Notes under the pieces: generated by a model
What the model was told of the DNA's origin: nothing
Database searches by the model: none
What the model saw: only the letters and a program-made list of their open reading frames with translations
Part shown: one piece after another, positions 11,177 through 64,000 of the stretch
How the letters are laid out: each line of letters begins with the position of its first letter
How positions within the stretch are numbered: the stretch's first letter is position 1
Program-made: the position numbers and the translations under genes
From: Ascidiella aspersa
Lineage: Eukaryota
Assembly (NCBI GenBank): GCA_963924565.1
Contig: OZ004609.1
Location: 17,360,001 to 17,424,000 of the forward strand
Direction: 5' to 3'
DNA: 64,000 nucleotides

Positions 11177-21408
<10,232 letters not shown>

Positions 21409-33799: not shown

Positions 33800-36700
33800 A
33801 TGCACCCAAGCCTTGCGTTGCGGCTACTGTCGCTCTGTTTGGTGCCAACCGTTTGTTGCGGTGATTTACTGACAGATTCAAACGCAGTCGAACTTAATTT
33901 AGAGTACGACCCTTTCCTGGACGACGATTTGTGGGAAACCGATTATGATGGGAAAAGAAACAGGAGAGCGCCCGGAAGTTGTCCGATGCGTAAGCTTTCC
34001 TTTTTTTAAAAGAAAACTTTTTTTACAATCATACATTACAAGATCGTTTTAAAACTACTATACCTGTCATTTATTTAGTATGACACGCGGCAGAATCTCA
34101 TAATACAGTTACATCTAATTTGCTTATTTAAATGTACGAAATCCAGTACGTGTATGTGTACTGTGGACTACGGGATTTTTGCATGTTTATTTATACGTAG
34201 AGTGTAAATTAGGGTTTACACTGTACGGTGAAGTAATTCACTAGAGCAGTGGTACTCAACCTTTTCTAAATTTTGCGAAGCGGCCCGTTAACAACTTTTT
34301 AGTTGATTCATGAACAAAAAGGGTATTTTTAAAGCAATAATTTATTCCCAGATTTAGTACAGGACAGTTCTTCAATTAAATTGTCTTTTGAAGGCAATCG
34401 TTAACTGAGAGTCCAAACTGTTGTTTTAGCAAACGTTCGCACTTTTTAAATCCTGACAATCGGAAAAGTATCAAAAATTTCTTTTTTAAGAATTAAACAC
34501 CGAAATATAATCGAATGTGACAGAACAATTCACGCATGGTGCGTTTGTAAGCGTCAATTATCTTTGATTAAGAGTATTATTTAATTTGCGTTTCTTCGCG
34601 GTCCCCATAAAACCGCATCGCGGAGCCCACGTTCAGAACCACTGCACTGGAGCCTGTATGCTGTCGATTTATTTTTTGCTATTAAATGTACAACTATTTG
34701 CATTAGCTCTAATGGAAATTACGGAGGGAAAAGCTAAAAATATCCGCGGAACGGCCGCCCTCTTGCGGTGGAAAGATACACCTGATGCACAATGGTAAAT
34801 AAACGAAAGTTGCATGATTTGTTATGTTGGAAAACTAGAGAAAGCAGCTTAAACCATTCGTATTTTTATGCAACCTATATCCTATTCCATGCTTACCAAA
34901 GGCATACTTAAAACTTTACTGAGTGTTTTACCAATGAAGGTATACCGTTGAGGTAAAAAATCCCAAATCCTCTTGTATTCGCGGAGAAGGCAACGTCACT
35001 CAGGCCCAGGTAACCTTGCGTGACCTCGACGTCGACACGCTTTACGTGGTGAACGTGATAAGCAGAACGAACAACGGATGTAGCGAACCAAAGGAGATCA
35101 CATTTCGTACTGGTGGGTAACTTGTTCGGATCTAGGACTTTTTAGGGGGGACATACCGTCACAAAATTACGTCATAACGTAAAACATTTAGACACGTAGT
35201 GTGACATGTCTAACTGCTTTACAAATGTGAAACCAAAACCGAGTAAAGGTATATCAAAGAATAAAACACGTCTATTTAGCCTGAAAAAATCCCACCAAAG
35301 TTGTCTAATTCTAAAACACATTAAAAAGCAAAATCAAATTCGCAAGAAGCATAAAGTTTTTGTTTGCTTTACGTTGTTAAAGTAAGGTTTGAAACCATTT
35401 CAAAATTTCCCATTCTTTAAAATGTAAACGTATGATAGGAATATCAAAAACCCATAATAGAAGTAGGTAACATTTTTGTACGTTTTTAATAATTCTTTAT
35501 TCATTTTCAACATCCTGGTAGTGTGCAGTGTGTCTGATTTAAACCTCCAACCAATATGCTCAAAAACTTAATCAATATGATACATTTTAGTTTTGATTAC
35601 ACCCATCTTTATGCTTTTAATAAATTAAAGAATACGAATAGTATGTGACATATCGTTTACTAAGCAACTGTCGTGTGTTATATTCAGGGCTTGGTCAATG
35701 GAAATGTGAAGGAAGCAGTGACGGTAAGGCATTTTTTGACTCATTATATTTTTAGTCCTTCCTACTATTTCAGTGGACAAAATGCTGATAGATTTATCAA
35801 TCACCTGTAATTACTTCGGTCCGCATGTTTATCTTCCTTGGTCGGTTTGACCCGATAGAGAATTGCAGTTAAAAAATAAATTACTACAATATTTATTATT
35901 GGTGTTTTTCGTTCAACTTTTTACATATGTTGCAGTTCCGGGACCGATCCACAAACTAACTGTGCCTCATGGCAATATTACATTTTCTGGGGCATATGTA
36001 AGCTGGGACCCATCTCCAAAAGGACTACAATATAAGGTATAGCAATGCCTTGCCATCTCAAGTTACCGACATGTTTTGTATTTTTTACTAATTAGTTTTT
36101 CTGACCAAAATATATTTTATATATATATAAACGTTTTGCTAATACGTATAAGTAGCGATCACATAGTTTGAATATATTGGCAAGAAATTGTTTGATGCGT
36201 TTATGAGTAATCTCTGAGTACTTCTAAGGGTGAATGGTTTGCTATTATCAGGTTGAAATTACGCCTTTTAACGCGATGTATTTCGGACTGGGCGAAATTG
36301 AAGAAGAGTGGACTGTTTTGCGAGGATTGGACCCAGGGAGTGCATACCAAGTCACAGTGACCGCAATAAACAAACAAAACATGGGCATCTCTGCATCAAA
36401 ACAATTTGTTACTCGTAAGTGACTGTTACACTAATATTAGCGAGGCAACAAAGTCTACCTATGTTTTAAGCAAAGCAAGGCGAAACTAAAGCGTCCGCGA
36501 TGAAATTCGAACTCGCAACATAAGCTAAACCACACGGGCTGTCGCTGTACCTACTGAGCTGGACAATAGAGGCCATTGTTTAAAATACGCCTACAATATA
36601 GTATTTACTCAACCAAAAACCAGCATTAAACGTGCTTTGTTGTGTGTATTTTTCTCAAAAAAATTCGTTTTAGGACTAGCTTCTCCTGGTGACTTTCTCG

Positions 36701-39700
36701 TGAGCAATGCTAGTTCCAGTTACCTTCGAGTGTCGTGGGAAAAACCAAAGCATTCAACTTACGTTGTGGTTAGCTTACATGAGTTCAAATCGTCTAGTGA
36801 TACCGTGGTAAGTTAACTCGCGTTGTCTCAAACTGCTTTAGGTGAAATCTTATAATCTAAGGCCTAAGCGAAGTATAATTTTGAATATTATTTGGTAGAC
36901 TCCAAGTAGTTCCATAAGTAGGATTACCATACGTCCCGCTTTGGGAAGACAGTCCTGGTTTTTAAGCTTTGTCCCGACATACCGAATATATAGTTAACAA
37001 AAATATTACGCTTTTTAGTCAGCCAACATTTACACACTTTAACAGATGTAAGTTTGCTGGTATTGGTTTGTTTTGCCAACTTGATGAAAGTAATACCTGA
37101 AGTCCTGATTGCATTCCACTGCCTTTCCGCCAGAGATGTGTGGCGTTGAATGCTCGCCCAAAATCACGCCAGTGACATCATTTGGCGTTATATGTCGCCT
37201 GAATTGTCATTTTTGGCGTATATATCGTCTTACTTTGACTAAGGATTTCAACCGAAAAAACTTTTGGCGTAAATTTTCGGATTTTTCAAATTATGGAATG
37301 CAGTCAGGTCTGAAGTGCGAGTTTATTTCCTTGCGTTAAATGTGAATGTAATTGTGACGTCACTATAGCGTATAATTTGCCCAGTGGTATGTTAGTAGGA
37401 GGTTGTTATAGTCTCTGACGATAGGTGTTCAACATAGTTCTATACTACTTAAAACAAAAGATAATTCTGCTGTAGATTTGGTTACTTTATGCGTCTTATG
37501 TATGTTTCCATAGTTGTCTTGATAGTGAAGGCGGTACTTTTTGCAGTGAAATTAAGTCAAGATAAACGAGAAAGCCTTGTTTAGCTGTTTGCGAACTGTT
37601 TTTGAATGTTTTTAAATATAAGTTTTTGAAGGCAAACTTTCTCGCGGAAATTATTTGACTACTTATTTCGTTGTAAACAATCGGCATACTTTAGTCCTTT
37701 TTTCAATTGCACCATCGCGCGAGATTTTACAGGAAACAAATGCCGCTTTAAGTTGAATGTTTTGTGACCTCACGCTATGACTAATTTTGCTGATATCATA
37801 CTTAATTGACCACGAAAATGCTGGATCGGGTGACCATTAGAAAGCGTACCGATTTTAAATAAAAAAACATGGTACGGTCAGCCTATCTATACTCTATATG
37901 TTACCTTTGTAGAAAGTAGGAAGTTTCAACACGTCGACTACCTCGCAGTATTTTCTGGACTTACTTCCAGCTACCAAGTATCTCATCCAGCTTCAAGCTT
38001 ACAACATACTTTCGTCAAGCAAAATGCTCCAGACTTCACTGTATTCAAGTAACTCTATAGGACAAACTTTAGCAGATTTTATCTCCTACTGTCAGTAGAA
38101 CGAATTTTCCTGTTTTTTTGAAAACGTGCCAGTTGATTAATTATTAAACCACGATATAAAACAGTGAAATAAATAGAGACTCGACCTTTCACAGTATAAT
38201 TAGGTATTTCACACTTCCATTAATCGTTTTGTGATGAATATTGCCCATTTTGTCGACACCAACTACATTTTCGATTTAAAATGAACATCACTTAAAATAA
38301 ATCGTCCATTACAATAAAAAAACTTTTTTCGTTACTAAATCATAATAAAATACTTTTATCGCCCAGAACTCCCCATTACGGCTAACATTCGTATTTCGAA
38401 TGTAACTGATCACAGCGTGTTCGCGCAATGGAGTCCGGTGAAGGGCGCTCTTAGGTATCGGATTGTCTTACGAAATTACCACGATGACCAAATTGTCAAG
38501 GTTTGTTGTTAAACAAAATTAGTTGATGTATACAACGACGTCAATGATAAGTTGCAATCGATTTTTACTTTAGGTCTTATTAGTTATTGTAACTTTTGTT
38601 CTAGTATTCTGTTTTAAGTTTTTAGTACAACGTAATAATAAACAAATAATGGATTTTTTTAAATGTTTGCAAAAGCTATTGATTACACAAAAAGTATTCA
38701 GATTTGAGCAAACCGATAATTATTTAATTTTAAATTATAATTACTACGTTTTTCGTAGGCCTACTGGTACATTGTATTTTCAATCATCGATTTTATCTAA
38801 CAATTACAGTTACCCAAGGGCCCCGATGGAAGAAAGCGGTATATGGTGTGTATACAACCCCATCGTACCGCTAACACTTACCCGTGTATTTCACCAAATG
38901 AAATACCGTCCATTTCAATAAACTAACAAACGTTTGGAATGTATTCGACTAATATTCGTTTATACGATTTTATGAATCCATTCATCCTGTCAGTGTGTAC
39001 TCATTTTTTTTTAACGTGTATAAACCTGCTTTGACGCAAGTTTATTAACTTTCTGTTTTTACTTGCATGTCAGTTTGTACTAATGTCACAAACTATGAGG
39101 TCACCAAATTATGTACCATGGTTCACATACTGTTACGTAATTGTTTACATATTATCAGTTTCGAATTTTAAAACATGGTGTTCTCTGTGAAGAAATGTTT
39201 GGTGACCCCTTGTATATACGACAGGCTATGGCCAGTCTGTGGGCTTCGTTTCATCCTTCATTTGGCTATGAAAACGAAGCATAGGGGAGAAATGTCGCCG
39301 TGTATGATTGCAATATATCTGATTCGCACTGATTTGCATTCACCTAAATCAAAAAATTCAAATGGTAACTTGTGGAATTCTTACACTCCCTTTTAGGACT
39401 ATAAGGTGGTGAAGACCAGTTATAAGCTTGATGATTTGTCGTCAGCCTCAAAGTACAAATTGGAAATTATCGCGCAAAACGATGAAACTGACAGTTTACC
39501 AGGGATGGAGATCGTATATACAAGCAAGTTATTCAATTTCTGTGATATACATTAATTTATATATATATATGCAAAAAAGTATAAATTAAGAAGAAAGATA
39601 CCAACACTTTACCTTTGCCGTACATGCCCCTTATACCGTTTATCGTACATATTTACCGTACAGTTATTCCATCCCCTCTATTGTTTTGTTTTTGATACTT

Positions 39701-42700
39701 TAGGTAATATATTTAAATATATTCATACTAATATGAGTTGAATGTTTCAAAATTAAATTTATCATCTGCGAATTTGTTGTTAATTGCGAACTCTTAAGAA
39801 TGTGTTTATTCAACTCAAGTTTTCCCGTAATAAAGTGGAAATACGCGCCCTGAGTTTTAGTTCTCATATCAAATGAGGTTGTATAAAAGTCGTTTTCGAA
39901 AATTTATTCCAGGACTGAAGAAGATGACAGCATTAAACGTCGACAAAGAGTACGTACAGGATAGGTCGCTAGTGGTTCGCTGGGACCCTGTTGGGGGCGC
40001 CGAGTGGTACGAGATCCAAATCGAACCCAATACCGTCGGCGTGTCGGGTATCGGGGATATCGAAAAGCGGCAGTACACGAGGATCGAGAACCTGACCCCT
40101 GGAACTTCGTACCTTATTACAGCGGTGGCAAAGAATCACAGGATTTTCGACACCGCCAGTTTGCCGGCAACCGTTGAGCAGTTTACAAGTAATGGTGGAA
40201 TCAATCTTAATTCAATGTTACTTAAAATAGACTGTTTTTACGTTTTTTATGCCGATGTAATACCTGAATGTCTTTTAAACATCGACCAAAAGGCCAAAAA
40301 GTTGCGTTTGAAGTACCGGGTTTATTTTTGTGTAATGTAACATATAATGTTTGATTTTGTTCCCCGGCAGGACTGTCAAAACCTCACAACCTAACAGCTT
40401 CCTATAACAACGTCAGTCACTCATCAATGACAGTCACGTGGTCACCTGTGCCACATGCGAAAATCTACCAGTTACTGGTGTACGACTGTAGTGGAGTGGA
40501 TCGCACCACTATGACAAATGGTATTTCGTTTTTATATAAACGACGATAAACCCATTTTACCTCCATACCTGTTGTACGTAACAGTTAAATAAATATAGAA
40601 TACTGTATGCCTATAGAACGATGAGTCGTCTACAGCACTAAATACTTCGCCCTTCGAATATATTTTATCTATTCGTAACAGACATATTTCTATTCGAAAC
40701 AAACATACTTATGATTACTTGGATTAGAAGAGATATGAACAGTCTCATAACGCGTCTTTTTTTACAGGTGTAGTGAAAAGGCCCATTATCACGAATGTTC
40801 TTCCGAACAAGTATCAAAAGTACAGAAACTACTGGTTGTATTCCTACCCAAAAGTACAAACTCTGAGCCTAAAGTGCGAGCAGGCCTTCGATAGCGTTGA
40901 AGACGCCTTGCTACAAGGTGAAAAGTATTAAGTTTTAGTAAATTGTGTTTCATGTTATTTTTGTTGCTCAGTACTAAACTGTTGTGTAGGGAACACGTTG
41001 CTCCGAAACAGTCTCAATAATGAACTCATATGCTACATAAGCGTTTTATTAGCAGTATGAATAACGGATCCTAATCCAAATCCACTATATGGGCCAACAG
41101 GTAAACCATACATTGCACAACGCTTTGTTGAATGTAGTCCTCTTATTATAATACAGGCGCAACACACCTCCCAAGTAAAGTGAAAGGCCAAGGATTTGTG
41201 ACGTCAAATGTTGTCACTCTTACAAACATGAGGCCGGGCGTTAAGTACGAAATCATTGTTGTATCTGGAGCAAACGAGACCAGAAGCAACCCTAGTCGGA
41301 TACTACAATACACCAGTAAGCCTTTTTCAACATAGATCACAAGTTTGCGTTTACAGCTATTCGTGTAATTACAATTTATTCGGGATTTTTCAATACTAAC
41401 TTCTAAACCAAATTTTGAGAGGCTTAGTTGCTATTATATTTGCATTTGACAATGTTTTTTTACCTAACGGAAGGAACGGATCTATTTTTTTCAAGGGAGT
41501 ATAACAAAATAGCAGCACAGGGTTTGTTGATACTTAACGGTTAACACTGTAAAAGATAAGATAAGTGCAGCGACACTTGCTGTGCTCAGACTTTTAAAGT
41601 GAAATCGAAGCTAACACCTGTCTAGATACCATTGATAATAATTATCTTGTGCTTAATGTTTGCCAACCCGTTTGTTTTGCTTTGGACACATTGTAATTCT
41701 CAGTCAACCGATTTCTTGTGACGCAGAGCTAACGACACCGGCCAAATACACAATCGATCCCAAACGGATTGAACCTTTCTCTGTCTATCTGACTTGGAAT
41801 CAGGTTCTAGGTGCCAATTACTATCGCCTGGATATTTTTACTACACCTGTTGTTGAACGTGCATCGAAGTTAAAGATGGGTATGTCCTGCCTTGGCTTTA
41901 ATTTAAAGCAATTGAAATTACATTATCCTGTTACCTTATCCCAAGTGAATATAGCATGTGTTCTCAACCTTTTCTTACCGCGTATCCTTAATTTACTTTA
42001 GTTATACCGGAATTTCTCGTGAAATGCTTGCATGTTTGTATTTATAGGTTTGCTAGTTGCTTTATCGTTAAATTACTGTACCAATATAGTGGTGTGTGAA
42101 CACAGGTTGAGAACCCCTGCAAAATGTGGTATTGGGTTAGGCAGACGATAGTGGTTTAATAACATGTGTGCGTTACTTTTCTGCAGCTTCCATCCAACAA
42201 AAGTACGTGCATACCATCAACGTAACGGGTCTTTTTGTGAAAGCCGGGCCACTGAACCCCTCAACGAATTACACTTTTATGTTAACTGGTAAGAATATTT
42301 CCTGCTTATATTTATTTTTACTTAATCAACTCCTTTAAATCAAACGTAATAGGCGAACAGTGTTCCTTAAATATTGTATTAAGTTTTGGTTGTGTTTGGT
42401 TATCTTACTTTTACGAAAATCGCAAACATTCTTTATTTAAAAGCGTGCAACAGTGACACAGAAAGCTTCCCAACTAGCACTTCGACGTTCACCCTTCTGC
42501 CTCGACCTTCTGCTTTTAATGCTGAGAACGTAACAACTAACACGATCCTGGTGCAATGGTCGTCAGTCAACCAAGCCATGTACTACAATGTCACCTATAC
42601 AGCGGGCAGCAATAGAGGGAAGCGTAAGTTGTTTACCTTATTGTATAGGGTTGGGAACTTAAGGTAACATTTTCAGCTTTTGCATATACATTGGCATTAC

Positions 42701-45700
42701 ACAGTTTGTATGCTGTTCATAAACACGAGCTTTAATTTAGTTCGTTTCTGCTCGTTCTCGTGTTTCCCAGACTCGCGCAATTCGGGTTGATAAAATTAGC
42801 ACATTAATAATTTATTGTCTATTACGAGCATCACCTCGTTAACTATTAAACGAGTTTTGCAATTCGACGCCATATTTTAAAACCTCCACAGGCTGGTACC
42901 AACTTTATACGTACTTTGAATTATACTTAGGTTACTGTCACAATTTTTTTTAATGTATCCAGGTGAACATTACGGTATATGTATCAATAAAGGACAATCA
43001 ATTGCATACCATACGACTTGTCTTTTTTGCGCAGTGAGTTGTATATGCTCTGGAGCCAAATGGGAGTAGAGCCTAATACTTTTTATTATGTGTCATATAC
43101 AGGAATATATAACGTATTTTTTTAATCTAGAGTAGACATATCCTACTTTTAAATTTGTGAACATAAGGAACGGTGAATCCAGACCCTCAACGAAAAAAAT
43201 GTGACTCAGGATAAACACCGAAGTAATGAAGGAAACTCACGTGACTTCATACTTTACCCACCCCTATCGTTTCATATTGAAAATAAAGAGGTTGTAAAAA
43301 CGCCCACAGTTAAATTGCCTTTAACCACAACCGCAGGTCAAAACCCACATTCAAAAAATGTGTCGACACCAATGATATTCCTCAACCACCTGCTTCCTAA
43401 CACGCTTTACTCGATGTACATCACTGCACAGAACAAATATACCAGAAGCGTTCCGGTAAAATTCGCCAAGTACACAGGTAAGCAATCATGTGCTCACTGC
43501 CTGTAAACGGTTATAGTAATATTAGTAAAGTCGTGTAATTTGTTTCAGAACTTCCGGTCCCCGAAAACTTTACAGTTGCTCGAGTTACCGACTCTTTCAT
43601 TTACCTCACTTGGTCAGATGTGGAAGCAAGAAAAACTTTCGAGTAGGTTTAACAACATTTCTTTCTATTTCGGACAAATGACTACACTTGACTTAAGTCA
43701 TTTGGACAACTCACTTGGGTTGAAATGAGGTGTTTTCTTTAAGAATTTTTTTTATAAAATTGAGCTAATTATTTAAATGTTTGCACATAAAACAAATTGC
43801 TTGCTATATGTTGCGTTGCTCTAATTATGACTTGACTGGGACTTGACTTGCGCAACTGATGACTTGGACTGGGACTGGACTTGACTTGTTATTTATTTAT
43901 AAAGACTTGCCTTGGGCTTAAGCTATTTTACAAATGACTTAACTGGGACTCAATTCATTTCAAAATGAATTGTTTCCAACACTGAGGTTAATATGGTAAA
44001 CGTTATTTGTAAATCTTTCAAGAAGAAATTTGAGAAAAAGAAGTTAAATAAACTAATAAGATTTATTAAGAAAAAATATTTAAATATCAATTAAATTTAA
44101 ATGTAATTTTAACTGTATTTAAAAACGTTGACGAAACAATAAGCTATTGTAAATACCTTATGACTTGTTGAAACACTTCATACAGCTTAAGTACAAAAAT
44201 AGACCATTCTGACAGTTGTCATGTTTATGTTTGTGAGTAGACACAGCTAAGTAAAAACGTTGTTATTTAACTCCAATACTGTTTAATTTTTCAACTATGC
44301 AGCATAGCCTACGTGCGCTATCCAAAGGTTCCCGAAACCTTTCGCGAAAGTTCAGACAAACCCGAGAAAGCGCTCGGTCCCCTTGCAGCCAACACTCCCT
44401 ACCGTATCTGGCTGCGTTCCGCTAATTTGCACACTACGAGCAAAGTGTTGGAGAAAGTCCAATACACAAGTAAGTGTAATACAAAGAAAGAAAATTTCCT
44501 AATATTTTAAATTTTTTAGCGATTGCTTTTTCCCTATTTTTTAGAATTAAGATCTCCGCAGCAAGTTTCCTTCAAGTCTGTTGTGGACAGTGAAAAAAAG
44601 CTTCGCATTCGATGGCAACTGGTCGAAGACGCTGATTTATATAAGTAAGAAAAAGTAAAGTTAATGAAAAATTTAAAACTTATAGGTCTTACTAAGTATT
44701 CACATTAAAATTCTCATTGAAGTTATGTGTATAGTTAACATTATTCTCAGTAAAAGTGTTTTTTACTGTGTGATGTTATAACAGCCTTGTGGTGATTCCA
44801 CTTTACAACGAATCCCAGCCAGGATCAGCTGAGTCGATCCCGGCCTCACTTCTTACAGACGTCATTGAAGTTGGAAAGTCGAAAACACGACAGAAACGAA
44901 GCGAAACGTCACCTGGGTGCGTACAGGATTGCGAAATACGGAACTTGTTCATATTTTTAACGATACATATATATAGGGGACTTAGTATATTATATAACCT
45001 CTTTGTTATGCATCTTGTTTCACCTTTGTTTTCGTGTAAATATGCCCAACTCGAATCGAATCACAACCAGCGGGCAGCTGACTAGATGACTTAACAGTCT
45101 TTCGCCGCCCCCTGGGAGCTACGGACCCTTTCTGTTTTTATTCAATTTTTTGCATGTATTTACCATTGTTCTAAAATAAATGTAAATCCATCTATCTTAC
45201 TACTCATAAAACATTAAAACATGAAGAAACAGCAACACAAAACCTTTCTGCATACAACGACAGAAAAATCGTGCATATTACCTCTTTAGTGTTTATTTTC
45301 TAATGAACCGACTTTAAATAGAGAAACACACAGCCGTAAAAAGCGCGTCAAACGAAGTGAAGAAAGTCCGATCGCGAACAGCAACGCGATCAGCTACATT
45401 GACTACAGAAGCTTGAGAAAAAAGAAGAGCAGTTCCGGATTCGTGGAGGTTGAAAAGTCGCGCTCCTTCGCGAATATGAAAAATGAGTATCACGTCAACG
45501 TCACTTCTGGTGACGTCATTTTAAGCGCGCTCGAGTCGGCGGTAAATTATCGCGTAACCGTTCGGGCGATTAACGAGAATACGGACAGCGCGTCAGTGGT
45601 CATTCACAAGTTCACGGGTAAGAACTAGTGAGTTGTAGAATCATTTAATACTTGTATAAATGCACCTTTTGGATAATCATTAACATATTTAATAATTCTT

Positions 45701-54700: not shown

Positions 54701-57700
54701 AGTAAAACTTAAAAAGTGTTCAAATCCAAGCACTATTTGTTAGGAAACAATATTTATAAAGAAAACTTCGTTTCAAGCCTTTGAAACTTTGTTTTAAGCC
54801 ATTTAACTTATTAATATTCATCCTAATTTACCACATACGAGAAACCAGGTAGCCTATTAATAAACTGGCGTAAGAGTTATAGGCGGTTTCACAATAAACA
54901 CTAACTTTAGGTAATTTTTATTTCTCAGATTCTTTCTCCTGGAATCAGGAAGCTGCTATCAGGATATGAGTCAACTAACTTTCTCTGGTCCAGGAGTATT
55001 TAGTCTTAACACGAGTCTCATGGAATTATATGTGGAGTACCAGTTCAGGGTTGTTGTCAGAAAAGGTGACAGGAAAAGTTCTTTCAAGCAACAAGTCATT
55101 GTTAAGGAGGGCGATCCTCCAGATTTTCAAATCAAGTGAGTTTTTTGTTAATAGTACACTACGCTTTTTGTTTGTTTTAAATCGGTTGTACAAATTACGC
55201 AAAGCCCAAAGAGATACATACAGTTTATCGTGAATGAAATTTTAATGGTGGTATATCCAACTGACACCGTATAGATATTTCAAGTGGTGTATTATAATCG
55301 CGAGAACAGTGTTTATAGTTTTGCTAATCATATAGGCGTATATGTAGTTACATAGATTTCTTTCGCGCTTAGTGCTGTCGTCTTTAGCTTAATTAGTACC
55401 ATCATTTCAGCATTATCCAATCAATAGGTTTTGGAATTATTTTTATAGACAAATTTATGAATGTTTAAAACCGTATTTTCGCATTTTGATCAGATGCGGT
55501 GAGAACTGTAAGGAGAAAATGAACCCGACCCAGGTCCTGGCGTTACAGGCTGTGTGTTACAACTGCAAGGCACGACGTTATCCTGAATATAAGTGGAGTT
55601 TGTTTGAACTTATATCTGAGGAGAAGAACGGAACAAGTAACAACTCTACCACTGGTGTGATAGCAAACTTTTCCATTATACAACAAACATAAAGCCAGTA
55701 TCAAAATGCAGTTAATGAAAGATACACACACATATGTGTTCAACAACTGTGATCTAGCCTTTCTGAAGCTGCTTTTTGACCAACGATTACGGCTTACGTA
55801 TCTTTAGTACACCGTGATGGCTTTCGGTGTACTAAAATGCAGTTAATGCGAAATTTAATCGTTTTCAGTAGCATTTTTATATTTATTTCAGTATAGATTG
55901 TGATTGAGTAAAAAATTTATAAGCCTACTAATGTTTCAAGTGGAAATACCATTCCTCCATTTGTACCAACCTGACTTCTAAATTAAAGGCATGTCTGTAA
56001 CATCTATATTTTTCTCTAAATCTCAATAAACATGCGAAATTGTGCGAATAACAATTTTTACCATCAGATTTATTTTATTAAGTGTGCGTTCATGCACCTC
56101 TTTTTTCCATGTATACAATGCACTATTTTATAGTATTTGTAGCACTGTTGAAATTTTCGAAGATTTTTTAAATTTGTTGACTTGTATAAGGTCTTATGTG
56201 TTTTTACTTTTCAGCTTCAGGAAAGCGGGGACCTGGAAAAGTCACTTACGTTGAAATAGTAAGTTGTTCGGTCTGATTAAAAGTGTCACCCACGACAGCA
56301 CAAAAAAATGTCGTAGTATCGTTACATTGACAATTTTCGTAGTTTGACTGGGAGAACAACTCGACCACCGGTGCGAACAAAACGGTTGTAGTTTTGAATC
56401 AGAACGCGCTCGTGGGTGGGCGCGAATACGTCATGCGAATCAACATTTCAATGGACGGCTTCGACGACCGGGTTTACAGCTTCTCTGAGTTTCGATTTAT
56501 CACCAACCTTCCGCCATACGGTGGCGAATGTACAACTGCTGCATCAGTAGGTAAGAAATGAGAACTATTGGCAAATAACGATGAAATACCTTACATTGCT
56601 AAACAAAAGCTATACGTACGTCCGTCGTTCAGTAAACATCGGTCCAAGCTTAGAATTTAAATAATGAAATTTCAGTTTTAAAACTTTTTTTGAACATTGC
56701 ACCTATTGTCTTATAAAGTTGATTTAAATCTCATGTGAATGAGAGACTTGTTATTAAATTAGCGTGATTGTCGCCAACGAAAATATTATCCTTCTGGCTT
56801 TTTTTTGGTTTTGCTTGTTGAACTCAATATGCGCAAATTATGCGAATGATTTAATGCTAGCCAAGATTTTAATGTTATTTTTCATGCACTTCAGGAAACT
56901 GTCACGATTTCATTCCTTACCGAAGTCAGCGCCTGGCTGGAATCAGACCAAAGCAAAGACTTAATGACACTACAATGGAAAAATGCGCGCAGTATTGCTG
57001 TTTGACCAGGTTAGATACTTAAAAATACATATTTTTATGTTTTAGGTATAGCATATAATATTACACTTTCACTGTTTATAATGCAGATATTTAGAACAGA
57101 TTCTGGTTTCAAATGTTTCGTATTAAAACCTAAAGTCGTACGCACCTGTCTGTATAGTTTTATCGAGCAGGGTTTTATTGTACATCCCTCCTATACCTAA
57201 CACACAATAAATTCAACACAACACATTCTTTTGAAACGAGGTATTTTTGGTGCTCAGCAAACCAGCATATTATCATTGGACGAACGCGGACAAACAATCT
57301 TGTCCATGTTCTTCGACAAACTATCGAGCAATCCAACACACGAGTTGCGCACCTCCCTGGCTACCAAGCGTAAACTGACCACTTCTTTTCCGTCCAGTTC
57401 CTCGAGTGCTCGCACGAAATCGCCGACACCAGGGCTTTTGACGAACTTACTTGCCAGATCAGCCCTGGTCAGGTAGTAAAGCGAAAGTGCCTGCAACAAG
57501 ATATTATGATAAATTGACTTAGCCCACGAAAACAAAAAGTTGATTTGTAAGCACTGTATGACTGCCAATCAGGCGGAAAGTTTGTGAGTTTGTATTCTGG
57601 ACAATGTAATGCGCCGTGGTAATGCAGACCACTGAAAGTTATTGTACACAAAAGAGTTATTGGGGGCTTACCACTTGACCAATATATTTGGGTGCCTTTA

Positions 57701-60700
57701 TCTACTGGTTTATGACAACACCTGGATTTGATCCTAACAAATAACGACATGTTGCACTGTACTACACCAATCATCTTCAGAAACCTGCAAAAATGCGGAA
57801 CTCTCTCCCTCGACCCGTCTCACTTCCTCGATCATGTCTCCCTGCACCTCTACGCCGAAATTGTTGCCGTCCTGCATGGCCGGTATCTGCAGCTGGACCC
57901 AGGCACGCACTGTGTTGCAGCACTCAGTAACAGCGCGCAGCTCCGGTTTGAGCACCTCTATCATACCACAGATGAGTGGGTTGCATTCTAGGACCGCCTC
58001 CGGGGTCGACTCTTCGTCACTGTCGCTCTTGTCACTGTCCTCCTCTTTTGGTAAGTTTCGCTTTCGGCGCTGCTTTTCGAGCTTTTGCTTTTTGCTTTTC
58101 GGTTCTTTGACCTGAGGTTTAAGACAGAGGGTGAAGGTTTTCGTTTGATAAAAAATTAACGTTGATGGCAGTATACAAACGGCGAAGCAAGTATTGGAAA
58201 GCCGATAACAAACACAAGTAGGCTAGTCTGTTTTGAACGTTTTTCACGCCAGGATCCTGACTGCAATCCATCATTTGTAGCCGCCAAAGATTCACGCCAA
58301 ATTTTTTTTCGGCTTAAATCCTACGCCAAAATAGGACAATATATAACCCAAAAAGGACAATTTTTAACAATTCAGTATGTGTTTGGACTGACTTTTTACT
58401 TTTGACGATTTACCATGCCTATAAATTGTTTTATGTTGCACTGAATATGTGAATAATAGAAATCACCTTGACCCTTGCAAGATAAATGTCGACCTTAATT
58501 CCTGATGAGTAACAGCAAAATAATCTAGCAAAGCTAGCAATTCAGGTCAGACACATTAACCAGATCTTAAAAAGATATATATATATTTCGCCAACTAAGG
58601 TATCGTCAGTATATCTTAATTCGAATTCGATTATTTTTTATTTTTTGCTGTATAAATTGTTTTGTAAGACTTTTGTCTTTTAAGGGTGTCTTTTAAGGGT
58701 AGGTAATATTCTATAGACTAACTTAAAAGTTTATCAAACTGGAAGCCCCGAAAGACCTACCTCCAACTCGGAATCCGAGTTAACAGGTGTGAAGTAGTGA
58801 TCGTCGCCGCTACTGGCGTTTTCTTCTTGAGCTGTTCGTTGTGACACCTGAGGCAGCGAACTCAGATCAATTTTGTCTTCATTGCTTTCCACATCCAACT
58901 TGAGTCTCCTGCAGCTTTTGCGTAAGTGCTCCTTTACTTGGAGTATGCTGGCGTCCGAGAACTGATCGCTGTTGAGAATAGAGTGGAAACGGCGACACAG
59001 GTCAGGCAGCCGATTTTCAAATAGGGCCTGAGCGTCTTCTCTTAGCCTGGAACTAAACTCTTCCATAACTCTCGTTTAATTTTATTCAAAGAATTGCCAA
59101 AAACATTTCCTTTTTTGCTGAGGCTTGGCAGCTATTGTTTTTTCGATTGTTACGCCATAGTTGTGAATACAATAATAAATTATAGGCATTTTTATTACTT
59201 GACTTATTTACATACACACAATATCAATATTGTGCAAACATTAGTTCCATCACGTAAATAATTTTAACATAAGATAACTGTTTCTACTGCAGTAATCATG
59301 TTTGTTGATTGCACAATATGTTAATAAGTAGAAGCGGAATTCAAATGAATGTAACCGAACCTGAACCTGTATTAAAAGGGGTTAACTTCAGTATGAAGTT
59401 TATGACCTAATGAGCTAATTTATACAATGTTTAAGGCTACATTTTTTTTTCTTGTTATATCAGACAATGACCAGGTGTCAAGGATAGCCTGCATAACTAT
59501 TTTTTTATCATTTATGATTTCTGCGTGTAACAAATTGCAGATGACCGGGTAACTGAAAAACGTAGTACCAAAGTCACAAGCGCGATTGACGGCGACCTTA
59601 CAGATGGATTTAAGAAAGTATTATAATTTAATTAGGTATAGGCTACTTTGTTACTTGCTTAAAAAGATTATCTATAACTTGTTAAAGTAGGTGATTTTCC
59701 GTTGCTTGGAGTTTTTACTAATTTGCCTTTAAAACATCAAATATTTTTAAAAATACAACCTTTCGAGGCCCACTTTTGTTTTGAAAGTATTCCGTGGCTC
59801 ACTTCTTAAAGTTCTGCTTAAATTGAATGTAATGTGTAAGAAATCAAGAGTACCGTACCTTAAAAATGTAAAAAGAAGAACATTTTTTAATAACCCACAT
59901 ATAACGCAACTGTTAGTGCGAAGCTTGAGAATGTACTGTAAAACGAACTAAAGAATTAAAGAATAAAACTAAAATTTTCACCAACTTTTTGTCCAAAATA
60001 CTTTATCCAAATGCACTGTGGCCCAACTCATGTTAAGAACCCGTGTCATAGAAGGTAAGCAAGGCACAAGGTGTGAGGGTTTAGGACTTTTTTGTGGACC
60101 ATTTTTTTACCAGGGGACGCCAACTAATTTCGAATAGCAGTTGTACTATCCGGCATAACTTTATAGAGTCTTCATGTGCCTTTCGGTATCCTTCAATCGT
60201 ATGACATCAGAATGTGAACTGTTTGATGAAAACAAGGAGTCAGCAAAGCGAGAACTAAAGTATGAGCCTCATGTAGACCACTTTCAACGACTTTTCTACA
60301 GAGGAGGAGCTGTTGTAGACGAGGTAAAATGACAAGCTGCTGTTTTTCATTAAAGCAAAACTCTACTGCAACTTTCTTTAAAGATCGTCCTTGAGAAATA
60401 TGAATTGCCACAAAGTATTAGGAATGTATTTGCTTCAACAGATCGTGTTTGAATGTCGCAACTGGAAAGACGAAGGAAAACTAAAGTCGTACCCGAAAGA
60501 AGGCGAGCGCCAGCCGAAAAGCACTCTCACTTACAAATTCACGACTCTACCACAGTCAAATCGAACTGAGCGTTTGTTGCTTTATTTTGGAAATGTGCTT
60601 ACTACCCCAGGTTCGCTTTTCTATTGATAATAGTCGGTAATGTGTAACAACTTGCTATGGCGAAAAAATATCCAAAAAAGAAGCATTGTGCCTAAGTGCA

Positions 60701-63700
60701 GTGCCTAAATCCTACATGCCAAATAGCAAATGACTTGGTTCAGTCTTAACATCAGGCCATTGGCAAGTTGGGCGTTGCGAAAAGTGGCTACTCGATCATT
60801 ACTGATATTATTTACCCGTTCATTTTGTAACCATATCTTTTGCATTTTGCGTGTTGTCTAACATACGTATTAATGTTAATTTTTTTTTTACTTTTTACAG
60901 GCATCTCGATGGCTTTGGGTGATTCCGCCGATGATTACGCCGTCACGGTCATCGTTCAAGTTTGTGACATGTTTGGGGAGTGCGCTCATTCTAACGTTAT
61001 ATACCTGCAGGTGATCTCAGAAACTAGGAATAATCTCTTTGACTACTCTATTTTAAGTTGAATGTTTTTTAGGGCGGTGCAAGCGACTTTCAGCTTTCAG
61101 TACCAAAAATGTAGGCTATACAAGTATACATACACGTTACTTAATCACTTTGTGAAAGATATAAGTTGTTTTCCAAGCAAGACAGAAAAAAACACGGACG
61201 AACTTCAGCGTATGTTTATTATGTTTAAAATAGGGTACAAGGTCAAATTTATTCTTGCGAAACATTGTTTTGTCGACTCATGTGCTGTATAAACACATAA
61301 AACTCAAACTTTAAAAACCAAATAAAAAGCATGATATATTCGTCTGTTTTTTACCCACTTTAGCCTTTTCCCGAGAGGAACAAAAGGATTTTCCTTTTCC
61401 GACACAATTTATTGCATTGTGTATAATATATCTTTATTCTCTGTAGTATCCCGTTTCTTTGTCAAAATTGCCTGAATTTTAATTTATTTTTTGATATTGC
61501 CCTTCGGGGTTAATTATTCACAGAATAAAAAACACCGATTTAAATAAATTAATATATTGCCACAGTAGCAACAATATTTTCTGTAAAATTTAAAATATGC
61601 ATGGAATCGCGATAAACAAACAAACGTAAATAAAAAAGACCATATAAAACAAAAATGCAATAGCATGACCAAACGGATCTAAAAAGCAAAATGGTTGAAA
61701 CAACAATCCACAATTGGTGGACAAAAAAACTGAACTTTACTGAGATTTTCAATATATTTGTTTAATTGGTAAATATGTTAACGCTATTATCCTGCTGAAG
61801 GAACGTATTAAAATTTTATAATATTTTTAATAACTACGAGTGTTTTTGTATTTCTAAAGGTTGTGCCGCCCAACTCCAACAGCATGGGTGCAACGTTGTC
61901 GGGCATAACGAGTGGAAACGCAAGCAAGCTTGCTATTCTATCAGACACTGGAAACAGCAAGGCAGCCGCTCAACTTGTGCAGTCAATATGTAATGCTAAT
62001 ACATAACTGTTTTGGCTTACCGCTCTAACTAAGCAATACCGTTGTAACAAACGTGTTTAATTTGTGTTGTGTGTTCCTTATTTCTACTTTACTTTATTAG
62101 AAGTATTGTGCGTTTGCTATATATGATACCAGGATGTTTTAGATGTTGATATGTTACTAAATTAGGGTGTGAGGTGTTGTTTCCGTGTTTTGAAGTGTTT
62201 CTATTTATCGCTGTTTTTTTTTCTTTACCCAGCCTCAATTATTAATGTGGACGACGATGAGATTGACGCTGTGATGAGCAACTACTCTGTAAACTTTACG
62301 AGTACCTTGGCCTTCACGACCACAGCAGCCCCCATCACGACATTAGCTACACCTACAACAGTCGCTTACCTCGGAAATGGGTCGAGAAACGGGTCGGCGC
62401 GGATCGATAAAAACGATAAAAAACAAGTAAGTATTTTTTGTTGTTGTACAGATAAGCGAACTATCGCATCTTTAAGAAAGGCATTTTGAAAACATGGTAG
62501 TAGGCTATTTGTGTAGAATTTAGAAACTTTAAGGGTTCCCTAAAACAGATACCGTGTGCCTTGTCGGTGGTATTATATTTGAGTTGCACTTGGCGCAAAC
62601 TCATATTAAAAGTAATTTACAAACACTGGATGCACGCTTTGAAGACTGGTCGTAGGTCGTTGCATTGTTTGATGACAATAATTGCAGAGGACGCTATTTG
62701 TCTGTAAAGATCGCGTGGAACTTACACGAAAGACAGAAGAGATTCGATTTAACAATTTCTGTGTTAATATTTAAAACCGTTAAAAATCGAAACTGGTGGG
62801 GTCATGACTAAACCCGTCCCTGAAAAAAGTGTTTACGATATACCCAATCATGTAAAAACTCCCACTTGTTTTTGCTTAGCTTGGGTATCTGTTTAAGGGG
62901 TCGCAACCGCGTGAGTTCTTGTTGTTTGCAAAGGCTTCTGGTCAGATATGCTACCTGTCATAACCCAACTAAAATTCAAAAGTATATTGTTACAACGAAT
63001 TAAAACGTTATTAAATAGCATTAGTGAACGTTATTTTCAAGTTAATGTGAGACAGGCAGCCACCGCCTATTGCAGCGACTTCGCAAAAGACTTCTCTAGA
63101 AAAAAGCTCAAAGCCGCTAAGAAACGACATGTATATAGCCAATACGTAGGAAAAAAAAGTACACGAAAGTTACGTTATATTTGGCCAATAAGACTGGCCG
63201 GCACTCTAAAACATGGCTTAGGCATTACAGCGGCCATTCTAAGGCCAATTTGCAGCGGGAGTCAGACGCCAGCAAAACAAGTGGCTTGTGTTGCAGAACG
63301 TGAGAACACTGCCTGCAAGACTGACAGTTATAGATTACGAGATTAAAGGTTACATGTCAAGTTTGAAACGAGGCGAACTGAAGCAGGAAAACACAGGAAT
63401 TTTACACACAACAATACGGAAAACTTTGCATCATCAAATATGATATGTAACTGAAGAACATATTTGGCAAACGAAAGCTGAAACGTGTAATCTAAAACCC
63501 TATTTATCACATCGTAAAATAACTTAATGAACTCTAAGATTTGGCTTATGGCAATTAATTAATTTGGGTGTTTAAGTGTTGATAAACACGTAACAGTATC
63601 TTCAGAAAAATAAGCCGCGGGCCGTATGCTGCCCAGGTCTGCTATATAGGTTTATAATGTAAACTGTTGCTACCAATGACAATAATCATAATAATGATAA

Positions 63701-64000
63701 TAACAATAATAATCAAGCACAGCTCATCATGTAATTGGAATTGTTAATCAACGTTTCGGCAACCTATTCGCTTTTTTCAGGTTGAAATGATTTAATTACT
63801 TAGCATTTGCTGTGTAGGGAATAAAAGTGTATCATTATATTGACGTTTAGGCATATACCTGATGTTTCTTAATGAAATATTTTTTTACGATATTATTGCC
63901 TCGTGAACTTCCGCAGCTTCGAGGCGACATTGTGAATGCCCTTTCGGATGCCACCAGTGGAATGACTTCAATTGATAACTTGCAACAGATGACTAGTGCC
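33800..64000 (+). CDS. Polycystin-1/REJ-family (PKD1-like) giant receptor, 3'-partial, ~50 exons: signal peptide, ~15 FN3, PAN, PKD, REJ (with inserted PAN), start of a helical region likely leading into GAIN
   Basis: Signal peptide MHPSLALRLLSLCLVPTVCCG (33800). FN3 exons 34707-52422 show the L..P....V.W...Y / L.P.T.Y...V.A.N..S pattern, mostly bounded by phase-1 introns. PAN at 52494-52850. PKD signature WDFGDG at ~53029. REJ motifs SPLVARIKGGSMR, ESIDPD, FDWFC, NLPPYGGEC, FECRNWKD and VCDMFGE at 53748-61010. The last visible exon starts at 63917 and runs off the window. GPS and TM regions are not visible. Confidence 0.85.
34247..34644. mobile_element. hAT (Charlie-like) MITE
   Basis: Ends cagtggtactcaac / gttcagaaccactg. 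TSD cactagag / cactggag. Confidence 0.8.
36450..36565 (-). mobile_element. Diverged tRNA-like SINE head, related to the 28136-28250 segment
   Basis: The minus strand reads agctcagtaggta (A box) ... gagttcgaattt (B box), followed by gccttgctttgcttaaaacatagg, which resembles gcctgccctgcttacatcatag in the 28.2 kb copy. Confidence 0.55.
36919..37885. mobile_element. Degenerate hAT-type element with a nested TIR element (~37104-37308)
   Basis: Outer ends taggattaccatacg / cggtcagccta. Inner inverted ends cctgattgcattcc / ggaatgcagtcagg, with a similar end (cctgactgcaatcc) at ~58256. Confidence 0.5.
41955..42119. mobile_element. Short hAT-type MITE
   Basis: Ends catgtgttctcaacc / ggttgagaacccctg. 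Confidence 0.6.
43686..43984. repeat. gacttg-repeat-rich MITE remnant
   Basis: Many gacttg/gactgg units ending in ccaacactg, a hAT-like right end. Confidence 0.5.
45716..46052. mobile_element. hAT (Charlie-like) MITE
   Basis: Perfect TIRs cagtgcttcccaacc / ggttgggaagcactg. TSD ctgtggac / ctgtagac. Confidence 0.88.
55718..55833 (-). mobile_element. Truncated second copy of the 27898-28378 element
   Basis: Reverse complement of ~28278-28375, plus an inverted gtacaccgaaagccatca arm. 15-bp TSD aaaatgcagttaatg (55703-55717 and 55834-55848). Confidence 0.8.
57254..59066 (-). CDS. Divergent proteasome activator PA28/11S REG (PSME3-like), ~289 aa, 3 exons (59066-58761, 58111-57785, 57490-57254), nested antisense in an intron of the polycystin-like gene
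   Basis: WVQLQIPAMQDGNNFGVEVQ matches the PA28 activation-loop region (canonical IPRIEDGNNFGV). Also YYLTRADLASK and KNMDKIVCPRSSN. Both introns are phase-0 GT-AG and the ORF is intact. AATAAA on the minus strand at 57179-57174. Confidence 0.88.

What the first reader, a model, noticed from the sequence alone, without database searches (positions are those of the whole stretch)
33800..64000. Polycystin-1-like receptor with an unusual ectodomain: ~15 FN3 + PAN + PKD + REJ
Seen: signal peptide, acidic prosegment ending RNRR, about 15 tandem FN3 domains, a PAN/Apple domain, one PKD domain and a REJ module, all in one phase-compatible exon chain. Known: vertebrate PKD1 uses LRR, WSC, C-type lectin and PKD repeats, and sea-urchin REJ proteins use lectin-type domains. 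I do not recognise a characterised member with a long FN3 stalk plus PAN. Inference: a lineage-specific long-reach adhesion, mechanosensory or gamete-recognition receptor.
Basis: partly seen in the sequence, partly recalled or inferred. Interest (0 to 1): 0.75.

Follow-up and report, generated by a model that had tools for sequence, protein, structure and literature searches.

The report
Polycystin-1-like receptor gene with fibronectin-repeat ectodomain
This is a roughly 50-kb animal gene for a polycystin-1-type membrane receptor-channel whose outer part is built from about 15 fibronectin-type repeats and two PAN/apple modules; that is an unrecorded but unsurprising variation on a protein family known for swapping its outer domains.

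Summary
On the + strand, from an ATG at 33800, lie a signal-peptide-like first exon and 15 diverged FN3 units, 14 of them split into two exons. A PAN/apple exon, a probable PKD domain and a REJ module follow. REJ is encoded by exons colinear with Pfam REJ positions 27-416. A second PAN domain interrupts REJ.

This is therefore a complete 11-TM-type PKD1-like gene, closest to the PKD1L2/PKD1L3 class.

A 71-nt, phase-matched intron joins the last FN3 exon to the PAN exon. The same FN3-PAN-PKD-REJ order is conserved in a related organism's contig.

None of the annotated PKD1-like relatives listed (0 of 72 and 0 of 20) carries fn3 or PAN_1. Their ectodomains are very varied, however (EGF, SEA, WSC, CUB, LDLa, F5/8C, SRCR, lectins).

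I found no RNA evidence and no evidence of function. The scan holds other polycystin notes on other DNA of this genome, but none of this gene.

Verdict: a real gene and a new domain combination of a known kind; moderate interest.

The parts
33800..33989 (+). Exon 1: ATG, hydrophobic signal-peptide-like stretch, acidic stretch, K-R-N-R-R; donor in phase 1
   Evidence: Read from the sequence. No Pfam family. No predictor was run. Its link to the next exon is inferred.
34568..35112 (+). FN3 unit 1 (N-half frame 34568-34795, C-half 34938-35112)
   Evidence: Pfam fn3 E 2.7e-5, positions 31-81. C-half profile hit. Phase-1 donor at 35112. The N-half is assigned by position only.
35851..36414 (+). FN3 unit 2 (N-half 35851-36039, C-half 36234-36414)
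   Evidence: Pfam fn3 25.7 bits. C-half profile hit. Phase-1 donor at 36414. The N-half is assigned by position and motif.
36529..38048 (+). FN3 unit 3
   Evidence: Both half-profiles hit. Pfam fn3 E 0.049 and 0.11. Phase-1 donor at 38048.
38339..39552 (+). FN3 unit 4
   Evidence: Both half-profiles hit. Pfam fn3 E 0.12 and 0.011.
39861..40337 (+). FN3 unit 5, the only one encoded in a single exon (open-frame limits)
   Evidence: Pfam fn3 31.1 bits, positions 11-83 of 84. Both half-profiles hit the same frame.
40355..41332 (+). FN3 unit 6
   Evidence: Pfam fn3 E 0.0052 and 2.5e-4. Both half-profiles hit.
41657..42288 (+). FN3 unit 7
   Evidence: N-half profile hit. The C-half at 42141-42288 is assigned by position and motif only, with no Pfam or profile hit. 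Phase-1 donor at 42288.
42383..43477 (+). FN3 unit 8
   Evidence: Pfam fn3 E 0.0063 and 0.023. Both half-profiles hit. Phase-1 donor at 43477.
43539..44469 (+). FN3 unit 9
   Evidence: Both half-profiles hit. No Pfam hit. Phase-1 donor at 44469.
44520..45617 (+). FN3 unit 10, with open frames between its halves that hold dibasic R-Q-K-R and R-K-K-R-V-K-R motifs. It is not known whether these are exonic.
   Evidence: Both half-profiles hit. Pfam fn3 E 0.0057. Motifs read.
46185..46772 (+). FN3 unit 11
   Evidence: Pfam fn3 E 0.023 and 0.005. Both half-profiles hit.
48021..48754 (+). FN3 unit 12
   Evidence: Pfam fn3 26.1 bits on the C-half. Both half-profiles hit.
49332..51017 (+). FN3 unit 13
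   Evidence: Pfam fn3 E 0.064 and 0.021. Both half-profiles hit. Phase-1 donor at 51017.
51179..51694 (+). FN3 unit 14
   Evidence: Pfam fn3 E 0.048 and 0.036. Both half-profiles hit. Phase-1 donor at 51694.
51803..52422 (+). FN3 unit 15 (N-half 51803-51925, a possible acidic insert exon ending at 52157, C-half 52287-52422)
   Evidence: Both half-profiles hit. Pfam fn3 E 0.0011. The C-half is conserved in L010. Acceptor and phase-1 donor read.
52494..52711 (+). PAN/apple domain 1, one exon, 71 nt after the last FN3 exon, with a phase-1 acceptor
   Evidence: Pfam PAN_1 E 1.1e-7, 32 bits. 60% identical over 77 residues in L010. Junction read.
52821..53641 (+). Probable PKD domain in three exons (52821-52934, 52996-53168, about 53490-53641), with a long insert after W-D-F-G-D-G
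   Evidence: Pfam PKD_4 12.2 bits, below cut-off. A profile from relatives ranks these frames best and second best of 1618. 65-91% identical in L010.
53747..53867 (+). Conserved exon between PKD and REJ, no named domain
   Evidence: 57% identical over 42 residues in L010. No relevant Pfam hit.
54061..56550 (+). REJ module, first part: five exons (frames 54061-54264, 54459-54686, 54915-55136, 55393-55689, 56343-56558)
   Evidence: Pfam REJ 27-39 bits each, colinear over positions 27-323 of 452. All five are conserved in L010. Relatives align here.
56873..57009 (+). Probable first half of PAN domain 2 (open frame; exon start not fixed)
   Evidence: No Pfam PAN hit. 35% identical over 40 residues in L008-L010. 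Cysteine pattern read.
60159..60329 (+). Second half of PAN domain 2
   Evidence: Pfam PAN_1 E 8.5e-6, 26 bits, positions 37-75 of 76.
60445..61010 (+). REJ module, continued: exons at about 60445-60609 and 60901-61010
   Evidence: The amphioxus relative P0044 aligns at 60445-60609, 41% over 56 residues. Pfam REJ positions 379-416, E 7.3e-4, below cut-off.
61812..64000 (+). Further open frames of the same chain (61812-62003; the Ser/Thr-rich 62166-62486; 63863-64000 running off the window). The gene continues in L003 and L004.
   Evidence: Frames. No Pfam family. Assigned by position only. Downstream domains.

Best explanation
One gene of about 50 kb runs from window 33800 to about 19.5 kb beyond the window's end. 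It encodes a polycystin-1-family receptor-channel subunit of roughly 4,000 residues.

From the N-terminus the order is: signal-peptide-like start; short acidic segment; 15 old, diverged FN3 domains; PAN/apple; a probable PKD domain; a REJ module interrupted by a second PAN; a GPS-like motif without the H-L-T cleavage triad; TM1; PLAT; further membrane helices; the polycystin (TOP) domain; and a six-helix PKD channel domain.

Shown here: the domains, their order, the conservation of the FN3-PAN-PKD-REJ junction in a related organism, and purifying selection on the reading frames.

Inferred from what is established for the family (PC1/PC2 and PKD1L3/PKD2L1 complexes; recalled, not looked up): the protein pairs with PKD2-type subunits. 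Its ectodomain converts ligand binding or mechanical pull into cation/Ca2+ entry.

The FN3 array sits where polycystin-1 has its array of Ig-like PKD repeats. It is the distal part and most likely serves as an extensible tether or adhesive rod of several tens of nanometres. The PAN modules lie near the membrane and are the likelier ligand-binding sites. GPS autoproteolysis is probably lost.
For: Domains found exon by exon.

FN3 profiles hit only the + strand between 34.9 and 52.4 kb: 27 hits among 1618 frames.

The junction is a 71-nt intron with a phase-1 donor at 52422 and a phase-1 acceptor at 52494.

Locus L010 from another organism is colinear for the FN3 C-half, PAN1, the PKD exons, five REJ exons and the PAN2 first half, at 35-91% identity. 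DNA similarity there is confined to exons.

Annotated single proteins (Mytilus, Patella, amphioxus, starfish) align colinearly from REJ to the channel at about 35-40% identity.

Of the within-species differences that fall in exon intervals, 10 of 15 are synonymous, P about 8e-4 against one quarter expected.

The upstream + strand neighbour (GT2 plus ricin lectin) ends near 30.3 kb. The next gene, a DEAD-box helicase, starts about 24 kb past the window end. The chain therefore fills the space between two other genes.

Ranked by summed tblastn bits, the vertebrate classes score PKD1L2 350, PKD1L3 239, PKD1 120, PKD1L1 110, PKDREJ 76.
Against: No transcript evidence. In the one RNA run, about 6% of which was read, 64 reads were laid and nearly all fall on an intronic repeat at 55.63-55.83 kb. 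Only a trace (mean depth 0.15-0.86) falls at 51.5-52.1 kb, and no splice joints were seen.

Exon 1 and several FN3 N-halves are assigned by position alone.

Pfam GPS did not hit either GPS exon. Pfam PKD is below cut-off.

The number of membrane helices was read by eye, not predicted.

Partner subunit, ligand, tissue and channel activity are all untested.

The exons were not joined, so there is no whole-protein search, fold or tree.
Confidence: 0.7

Rival explanations
1. The same gene acts specifically as a sperm-surface receptor for the egg coat or jelly, like sea-urchin REJ or Ciona s-Themis-B. The ectodomain recognises an egg ligand and triggers Ca2+ entry.
For: The family precedent is REJ/PKDREJ/s-Themis (passages read). 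Near-absence from the one RNA run would fit tissue-restricted expression. A gene is nested antisense in an intron, and this is conserved in L010. That recalls the s-/v-Themis arrangement.
Against: The nested gene is a PA28 proteasome activator, not a fibrinogen-like v-Themis. It lies in a REJ-region intron, not the first intron. The part examined shows mostly synonymous polymorphism, 10 of 15, and is not hypervariable. By summed bits PKDREJ is the most distant vertebrate class. No expression data by tissue exist.
Confidence: 0.15
2. There are two transcription units or predominant isoforms: a secreted FN3 rod protein, and a shorter PKD1-like receptor that starts near the PAN exon.
For: No RNA joins were seen. 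The frame of the last FN3 exon reaches a stop 5 nt past its donor, so an unspliced form would end there.
Against: Only 71 nt separate the last FN3 exon from the PAN exon, with a strong donor and matching phase 1 on both sides. There is no room for a promoter plus a signal-peptide exon. The same adjacency is conserved in L010.
Confidence: 0.1
3. The locus is a decaying or non-functional copy of a PKD1-like gene.
For: Almost no RNA reads. The GPS triad is absent.
Against: Every domain-bearing exon examined is open. The exons are conserved against diverged introns in another organism. There is an excess of synonymous polymorphism. In addition, 5 of 51 relatives lack H-L-T/S/C: two have H-M-T and three have no comparable motif.
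Confidence: 0.05

Closest known systems
Invertebrate and cephalochordate PKD1L2-like / 'polycystin family receptor for egg jelly-like' proteins (for example the amphioxus P0044/P0046, Mytilus P0019, Patella P0020 and Patiria P0043 entries returned)
   Same: REJ, GPS region with TM1, PLAT, polycystin domain and PKD channel, in the same order. They give the best summed similarity, 697-753 bits at about 35-38% identity.
   Different: Their listed ectodomains use PKD, WSC, Laminin_G_3, EGF and SEA. None lists fn3 or PAN_1. None aligns upstream of window 54000. Most keep H-L-T/S at the GPS.
Vertebrate polycystin-1 (PKD1)
   Same: The overall plan: a long tandem array of beta-sandwich domains, then REJ, GPS, 11-TM type core with PLAT.
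   Different: The array is FN3, not PKD repeats. No LRR, WSC or C-type lectin was found. Similarity is much lower than to PKD1L2 (120 against 350 bits). The channel domain is well matched to Pfam PKD_channel.
Ciona s-Themis-B/B2 (passages of PMC7018956)
   Same: It is an ascidian PKD1-like protein with REJ, GPS, LH2/PLAT and a C-terminal PKD channel. Its gene hosts an antisense gene in an intron.
   Different: s-Themis has a hypervariable region, not an FN3 array, PAN or PKD. Its nested gene is fibrinogen-like v-Themis in the first intron. Here the nested gene is PA28, in the intron that splits PAN2. No s-Themis sequence was available to compare.
Sea-urchin SpREJ proteins (passages of PMC1934368)
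   Same: PKD1-family members with REJ, GPS, PLAT and 1-11 TM segments.
   Different: The passages read name C-type lectin, EGF, SUEL, PKD and WSC domains. 'Fibronectin' occurs only as a proposed fold of the REJ region, and 'apple' does not occur.

Membership tests
PKD1 (polycystin-1-like, 11-TM) family | REJ module in the ectodomain | tested here: met
   Six exons are colinear with Pfam REJ positions 27-416 of 452. Five are above the 25-bit cut-off. The whole-genome scan also flags them.
PKD1 (polycystin-1-like, 11-TM) family | GPS motif just before TM1, with the H-L-T/S cleavage triad | tested here: not met
   The cysteine framework and position align with 51 relatives. The triad reads K-L-S-P-T-S, against H-L-[T/S/C] in 46 of 51. 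Pfam GPS did not hit. Three of the relatives also have no H-L/H-M-T triad at all (two more read H-M-T), so this speaks against cleavage, not against membership.
PKD1 (polycystin-1-like, 11-TM) family | PLAT/LH2 domain in the first cytoplasmic loop | tested here: met
   Pfam PLAT on two consecutive exons after TM1: positions 1-33 (E 0.015) and 43-87 (E 1.7e-5, 25.9 bits against cut-off 23).
PKD1 (polycystin-1-like, 11-TM) family | C-terminal six-helix polycystin channel region with the polycystin (TOP) domain | tested here: met
   Polycystin_dom on three exons (4-56, 70-144, 143-199 of 199). PKD_channel on three exons (6-82, 81-154, 184-222 of 225).
PKD1 (polycystin-1-like, 11-TM) family | Eleven membrane helices in one polypeptide | tested here: inconclusive
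   Hydrophobic stretches were read by eye. No predictor was run, no transcript exists, and the exons were not joined.
Vertebrate polycystin-1 proper | LRR, WSC, C-type lectin, LDL-A and a long array of PKD repeats | tested here: not met
   None of these was found in any frame scanned. There is only one probable PKD domain.
s-Themis type self-recognition locus | Hypervariable ectodomain region, with a fibrinogen-like partner gene antisense in the first intron | tested here: not met
   The nested gene is PA28 (PA28_C 75.5 and 73.6 bits) in a late intron. In the 51.1-54.8 kb part, 10 of 15 exon differences are synonymous. The FN3 region upstream of 51.1 kb was not examined for polymorphism.
FN3 domain | Match to the fn3 profile | tested here: met
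   Three frames are above the Pfam cut-off and 13 of 15 C-halves have E <= 0.11, with N- and C-half profile positions alternating.
PAN/apple domain | Match to PAN_1 above the cut-off, with the cysteine pattern | tested here: met
   32 bits and 26 bits against a cut-off of 21.4.
PKD (Ig-like) domain | Match to a PKD profile | tested here: inconclusive
   Pfam gives 12.2 bits, below the cut-off of 27. My own profile from relatives gives E 4e-4 and 0.02 and ranks these frames best of 1618.

The most novel reading that the evidence does not exclude
In a tunicate lineage, a polycystin has replaced the Ig-like PKD-repeat tether of polycystin-1 with a 15-unit FN3 rod. It has inserted a PAN/apple module into the REJ fold and given up GPS autoproteolysis, perhaps for furin-type processing at the dibasic sites. 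Its gene stays locked to an antisense PA28 gene in a conserved host-nested pair that works as a fertilisation or self-recognition module, as the s-/v-Themis pairs do.
Probability: 0.08. Interest if true: 0.65.

Novelty: new variant of a known kind. Interest (0 to 1): 0.38.

Why it matters
Polycystin-1-type proteins are central to kidney disease, left-right patterning, taste, sperm-egg signalling and invertebrate mechanosensation. How their huge ectodomains act is still unclear.

This gene offers a natural variant with three unusual features:
- An FN3 rod takes the place of the PKD-repeat array.
- The REJ fold tolerates an inserted PAN domain.
- The GPS triad is missing.

It could therefore be used to ask which ectodomain features the receptor-channel core really needs.

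The relatives already show EGF, SEA, WSC, CUB, LDLa, F5/8C, SRCR, HYR, Fz and lectin domains. One more combination is therefore of moderate, not high, surprise.

Tried and rejected
Representative search. One REJ exon against 1.84 billion cluster representatives gave 12 hits. Six were short ORF fragments, 46-70% identical. The rest were weak or spurious: a pea protein, a 'subtilisin', bacterial-type repeat proteins, and one crinoid REJ protein at E 6e-4. No close full-length orthologue was found. The query was only 74 residues, so distant ones can be missed.

Homologue searches. Three homologous-protein searches used annotated relatives as queries, because single exons are too short for that tool's length window. 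They depend on shared 5-residue words. They returned no tunicate protein, so they do not show that tunicate orthologues are absent.

ESM Atlas. With the REJ exon it only confirmed REJ-like clusters at scores of 0.81-0.88, which is lead level.

Reads. RNA showed nothing usable. X1 and X2 behave as genomic DNA.

Paralogues. The 30 kb upstream of five other REJ loci in this genome showed no FN3 (by my gene-specific profiles) and no PAN or PKD exon similarity. The profiles are tuned to this gene, but the C-half profile did find FN3 in an unrelated protein, P0014.

L010. Upstream of the FN3 C-half exon I found no N-half exon within the 2.4 kb available.

Papers. Searches found no paper describing a PKD1-like protein with FN3 and PAN domains. 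I read only passages of PMC1934368, PMC6294549 and PMC7018956. Supplements were not opened. The Platynereis paper's tree and domain figures, and its source data, may bear on where this gene sits.

Rejected readings. Chance ORFs are excluded by the profile controls. A pseudogene is unlikely given the constraint.

Not done. The exons were not joined, so there is no whole-protein search, fold, transmembrane prediction or tree.


Full report
WHERE. The window is G000:C3:17360001-17424000, + strand, of a 308.6-Mb genome in 75 contigs. It contains no N. G+C in 33.8-64 kb is 0.34-0.40. Earlier notes of this scan call the genome a probable sea squirt. I tested this only by finding one glycoside-hydrolase-6 match over the Pfam cut-off in the genome (28.1 bits). 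As far as I recall, tunicates are the only animals with that family. I treat the label as likely, not shown.

THE OBSERVATION. Stop-to-stop frames on the + strand show a chain of short exons.

Exon 1 starts at the ATG at 33800. It reads as a hydrophobic signal-peptide-like stretch, an acidic stretch and K-R-N-R-R, and it ends at a GTAAGC donor after 33989 in phase 1. No predictor was run and Pfam finds nothing there.

Between 34.6 and 52.4 kb lie 15 FN3 units. Fourteen are split at the same place into an N-half and a C-half exon, and one (39861-40337) is a single exon.
- Pfam fn3 hits 13 of the 15 C-half or whole frames at E <= 0.11. Three are above the 25-bit cut-off, at 25.7, 31.1 and 26.1 bits.
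- Pfam fn3 also hits seven N-half frames. The profile positions fit N- or C-halves.
- Profiles that I built from the halves hit 13 N-half and 14 C-half frames among all 1618 six-frame open frames of the window. Every hit is on the + strand between 34.9 and 52.4 kb, in alternating order, and none is elsewhere.
- Their E-values are inflated because hits were fed back into the profiles. The absence of any other hit is the control.
- Three halves (34568-34795, 35851-36039, 42141-42288) rest on position and motifs only.
- The repeats are old: median pairwise identity is 26%.
- Consensus donors in phase 1 follow 10 of the 15 C-half exons.

AFTER THE FN3 ARRAY. The last FN3 exon ends at 52422 (donor GTAAGT, phase 1). 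The PAN exon starts at 52494 after a TAG acceptor, also in phase 1. The intron is therefore 71 nt.
- PAN_1 scores 32 bits against a cut-off of 21.4.
- The next exons (52821-52934, 52996-53168, about 53490-53641) join in phase 0 and carry W-D-F-G-D-G.
- Pfam PKD_4 gives only 12.2 bits there. A profile from 37 PKD-motif segments of 24 relatives ranks the second and third of these exons first and second among the 1618 frames, at E 4e-4 and 0.02. I call the PKD domain probable.
- Six further exons match Pfam REJ colinearly at positions 27-89, 89-132, 145-209, 205-273, 260-323 and 379-416. Their scores are 27.0, 34.0, 39.2, 28.1, 34.9 and 18.7 bits.
- Between REJ positions 323 and 379 lies a second PAN domain. 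Its second half scores 26 bits (60159-60329). Its first half (frame 56873-57019) has no Pfam hit but is conserved in the related loci.
- The 3.1-kb intron between the two halves holds an antisense PA28 proteasome-activator gene. PA28_C scores 75.5 and 73.6 bits, and PA28_N has E 0.0048.

BEYOND THE WINDOW. I fetched the next 50 kb.
- In L003 and L004 the chain continues with a helical region without Pfam hits.
- A GPS-like region with TM1 follows at L003:6060-7017. It has no Pfam hit but aligns to 51 relatives.
- PLAT follows on two exons.
- The polycystin domain is on three exons, with a best E of 3.3e-17.
- PKD_channel is on three exons covering positions 6-222 of 225.
- The GPS reads C-V-C-T-K-L-S-P-T-S-I-F. 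Of the 51 relatives, 46 have H-L-[T/S/C] at that place. Autoproteolysis is therefore probably lost; that inference rests on the known role of the histidine, which I recall rather than looked up.
- An R-R-R-R-S stretch lies in the frame just upstream.
- The next gene, a DEAD-box helicase, starts in L005.
- Upstream, a GT2 plus ricin-lectin gene (GalNAc-transferase type) ends near 30.3 kb, and an AAA ATPase gene lies on the - strand.

ONE GENE OR TWO. Four results favour one gene.
- The intron between FN3 and PAN is 71 nt and phase-matched.
- A contig from a JGI metagenome (L010), which must come from a related animal, is colinear for the FN3 C-half exon, PAN1, the PKD exons, five REJ exons, the PAN2 first half and the nested PA28, at 35-91% protein identity. 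DNA similarity there is confined to exons.
- Single annotated proteins of mussel, limpet, amphioxus and starfish align colinearly from the REJ exons to the channel exons.
- Of the differences between the window and two genomic read sets that fall in my exon intervals, 10 of 15 are synonymous. P is about 8e-4 if a quarter were expected. The tool showed only 40 of 88 differences.

One result counts against. The single RNA run of this species, about 6% of which was read, gave 64 laid reads. Nearly all fall on a highly repeated intronic element at 55.63-55.83 kb. A trace falls at 51.5-52.1 kb, and there are no joints. Transcription and splicing are therefore not shown.

WHAT IT IS LIKE. By summed tblastn bits the nearest annotated proteins are 'polycystin family receptor for egg jelly-like' of amphioxus (753 and 738), PKD1L2-like of Mytilus (725) and a starfish polycystin-1-like protein (724), all at about 35-38% identity. 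Among vertebrate classes the order is PKD1L2 (350), PKD1L3 (239), PKD1 (120), PKD1L1 (110), PKDREJ (76). This is a ranking, not a tree.

HOW UNUSUAL.
- None of the 72 relatives, and none of the 20, lists PF00041 or PF00024. Four proteins are common to both lists.
- No relative aligns to the window upstream of 54000.
- My FN3 profiles and the PAN and PKD exons find nothing in the PKD1-like proteins fetched. The C-half profile does find FN3 in an unrelated protein.
- Five other REJ loci in this genome show no such exons in the 30 kb upstream.
- The representative search found six short fragments, 46-70% identical, from unannotated assemblies, and no close full-length protein.
- In the passages I read, SpREJ proteins have lectin, EGF, SUEL, PKD and WSC domains. 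s-Themis has a hypervariable region, REJ, GPS and LH2.
- No paper with the combination turned up.
- The same lists show that ectodomains in this family are freely shuffled, so a new combination is a modest surprise.
- The surveys are limited by word sharing and length windows, and they returned no tunicate protein at all.

MECHANISM. Shown: the domain order. Inferred from the family: a receptor-channel subunit that pairs with PKD2-type subunits. The FN3 array is distal, N-terminal of PAN1-PKD-REJ, and stands where polycystin-1 has its PKD repeats. It is therefore best read as an extensible tether or adhesive rod. The PAN modules near the membrane are the likelier binding sites. A sperm-receptor role is possible but has no specific support. 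The nested gene is PA28, not a v-Themis-like gene, and the part tested is not hypervariable.

LIMITS. Supplements of papers were not available.

VERDICT. This is a real, conserved PKD1L2-like gene with a new ectodomain combination, of moderate interest.

Noticed in passing
window 57254-59066 (- strand): A PA28 proteasome-activator gene lies antisense in the 3.1-kb intron that splits the second PAN domain (PA28_C 75.5 and 73.6 bits; PA28_N E 0.0048). The nesting is conserved in L008-L010.
   Followed up: partly
window 55631-55827: An intronic element of very high copy number, with summed contig depth above 100,000 in both genomic runs. It shows opposite-strand joints and attracts nearly all the RNA reads laid on the stretch.
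   Followed up: no
window 63400-63600: A repeat of about 200 bp with at least 39 other copies at 95-98% identity across contigs C1-C9, including a cluster on C5 near 3.0-3.1 Mb. It looks like a young SINE- or MITE-type element.
   Followed up: no
window 21739-30300 (+ strand): The upstream neighbour has glycosyltransferase-2 exons and a ricin-type lectin exon, the build of a polypeptide GalNAc-transferase.
   Followed up: partly
window about 14900-20040 (- strand): AAA ATPase exon at 14933-15283, with long N-terminal exons up to about 20 kb. The SPATA5-like gene noted earlier seems to extend beyond the 14493 given in that note.
   Followed up: no
L003:6060-6401 and window 44774-45625: Runs of basic residues of the furin-site type (R-R-R-R-S before the GPS; R-Q-K-R and R-K-K-R-V-K-R between the halves of FN3 unit 10). 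It is not known whether the latter are exonic.
   Followed up: no
L004:3230-4770: The 3.2-kb intron inside the polycystin-domain region holds long open frames unrelated to the gene, possibly a transposon remnant.
   Followed up: no
G000:C2:33741097-33744424 (-) and C2:33865489-33869617 (+): Two further REJ-bearing loci lie 120 kb apart on opposite strands, and three more lie on C1. At the distances examined, none has FN3 or PAN exons of this gene's type upstream.
   Followed up: partly
window 53076-53225: Run X1 holds two haplotype contigs here. One differs at six places within 150 bp; of the five places inside the exon (53106, 53112, 53139, 53160, and 53013 nearby) all are synonymous, and the two further places at 53175 and 53195 lie in the intron.
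   Followed up: partly
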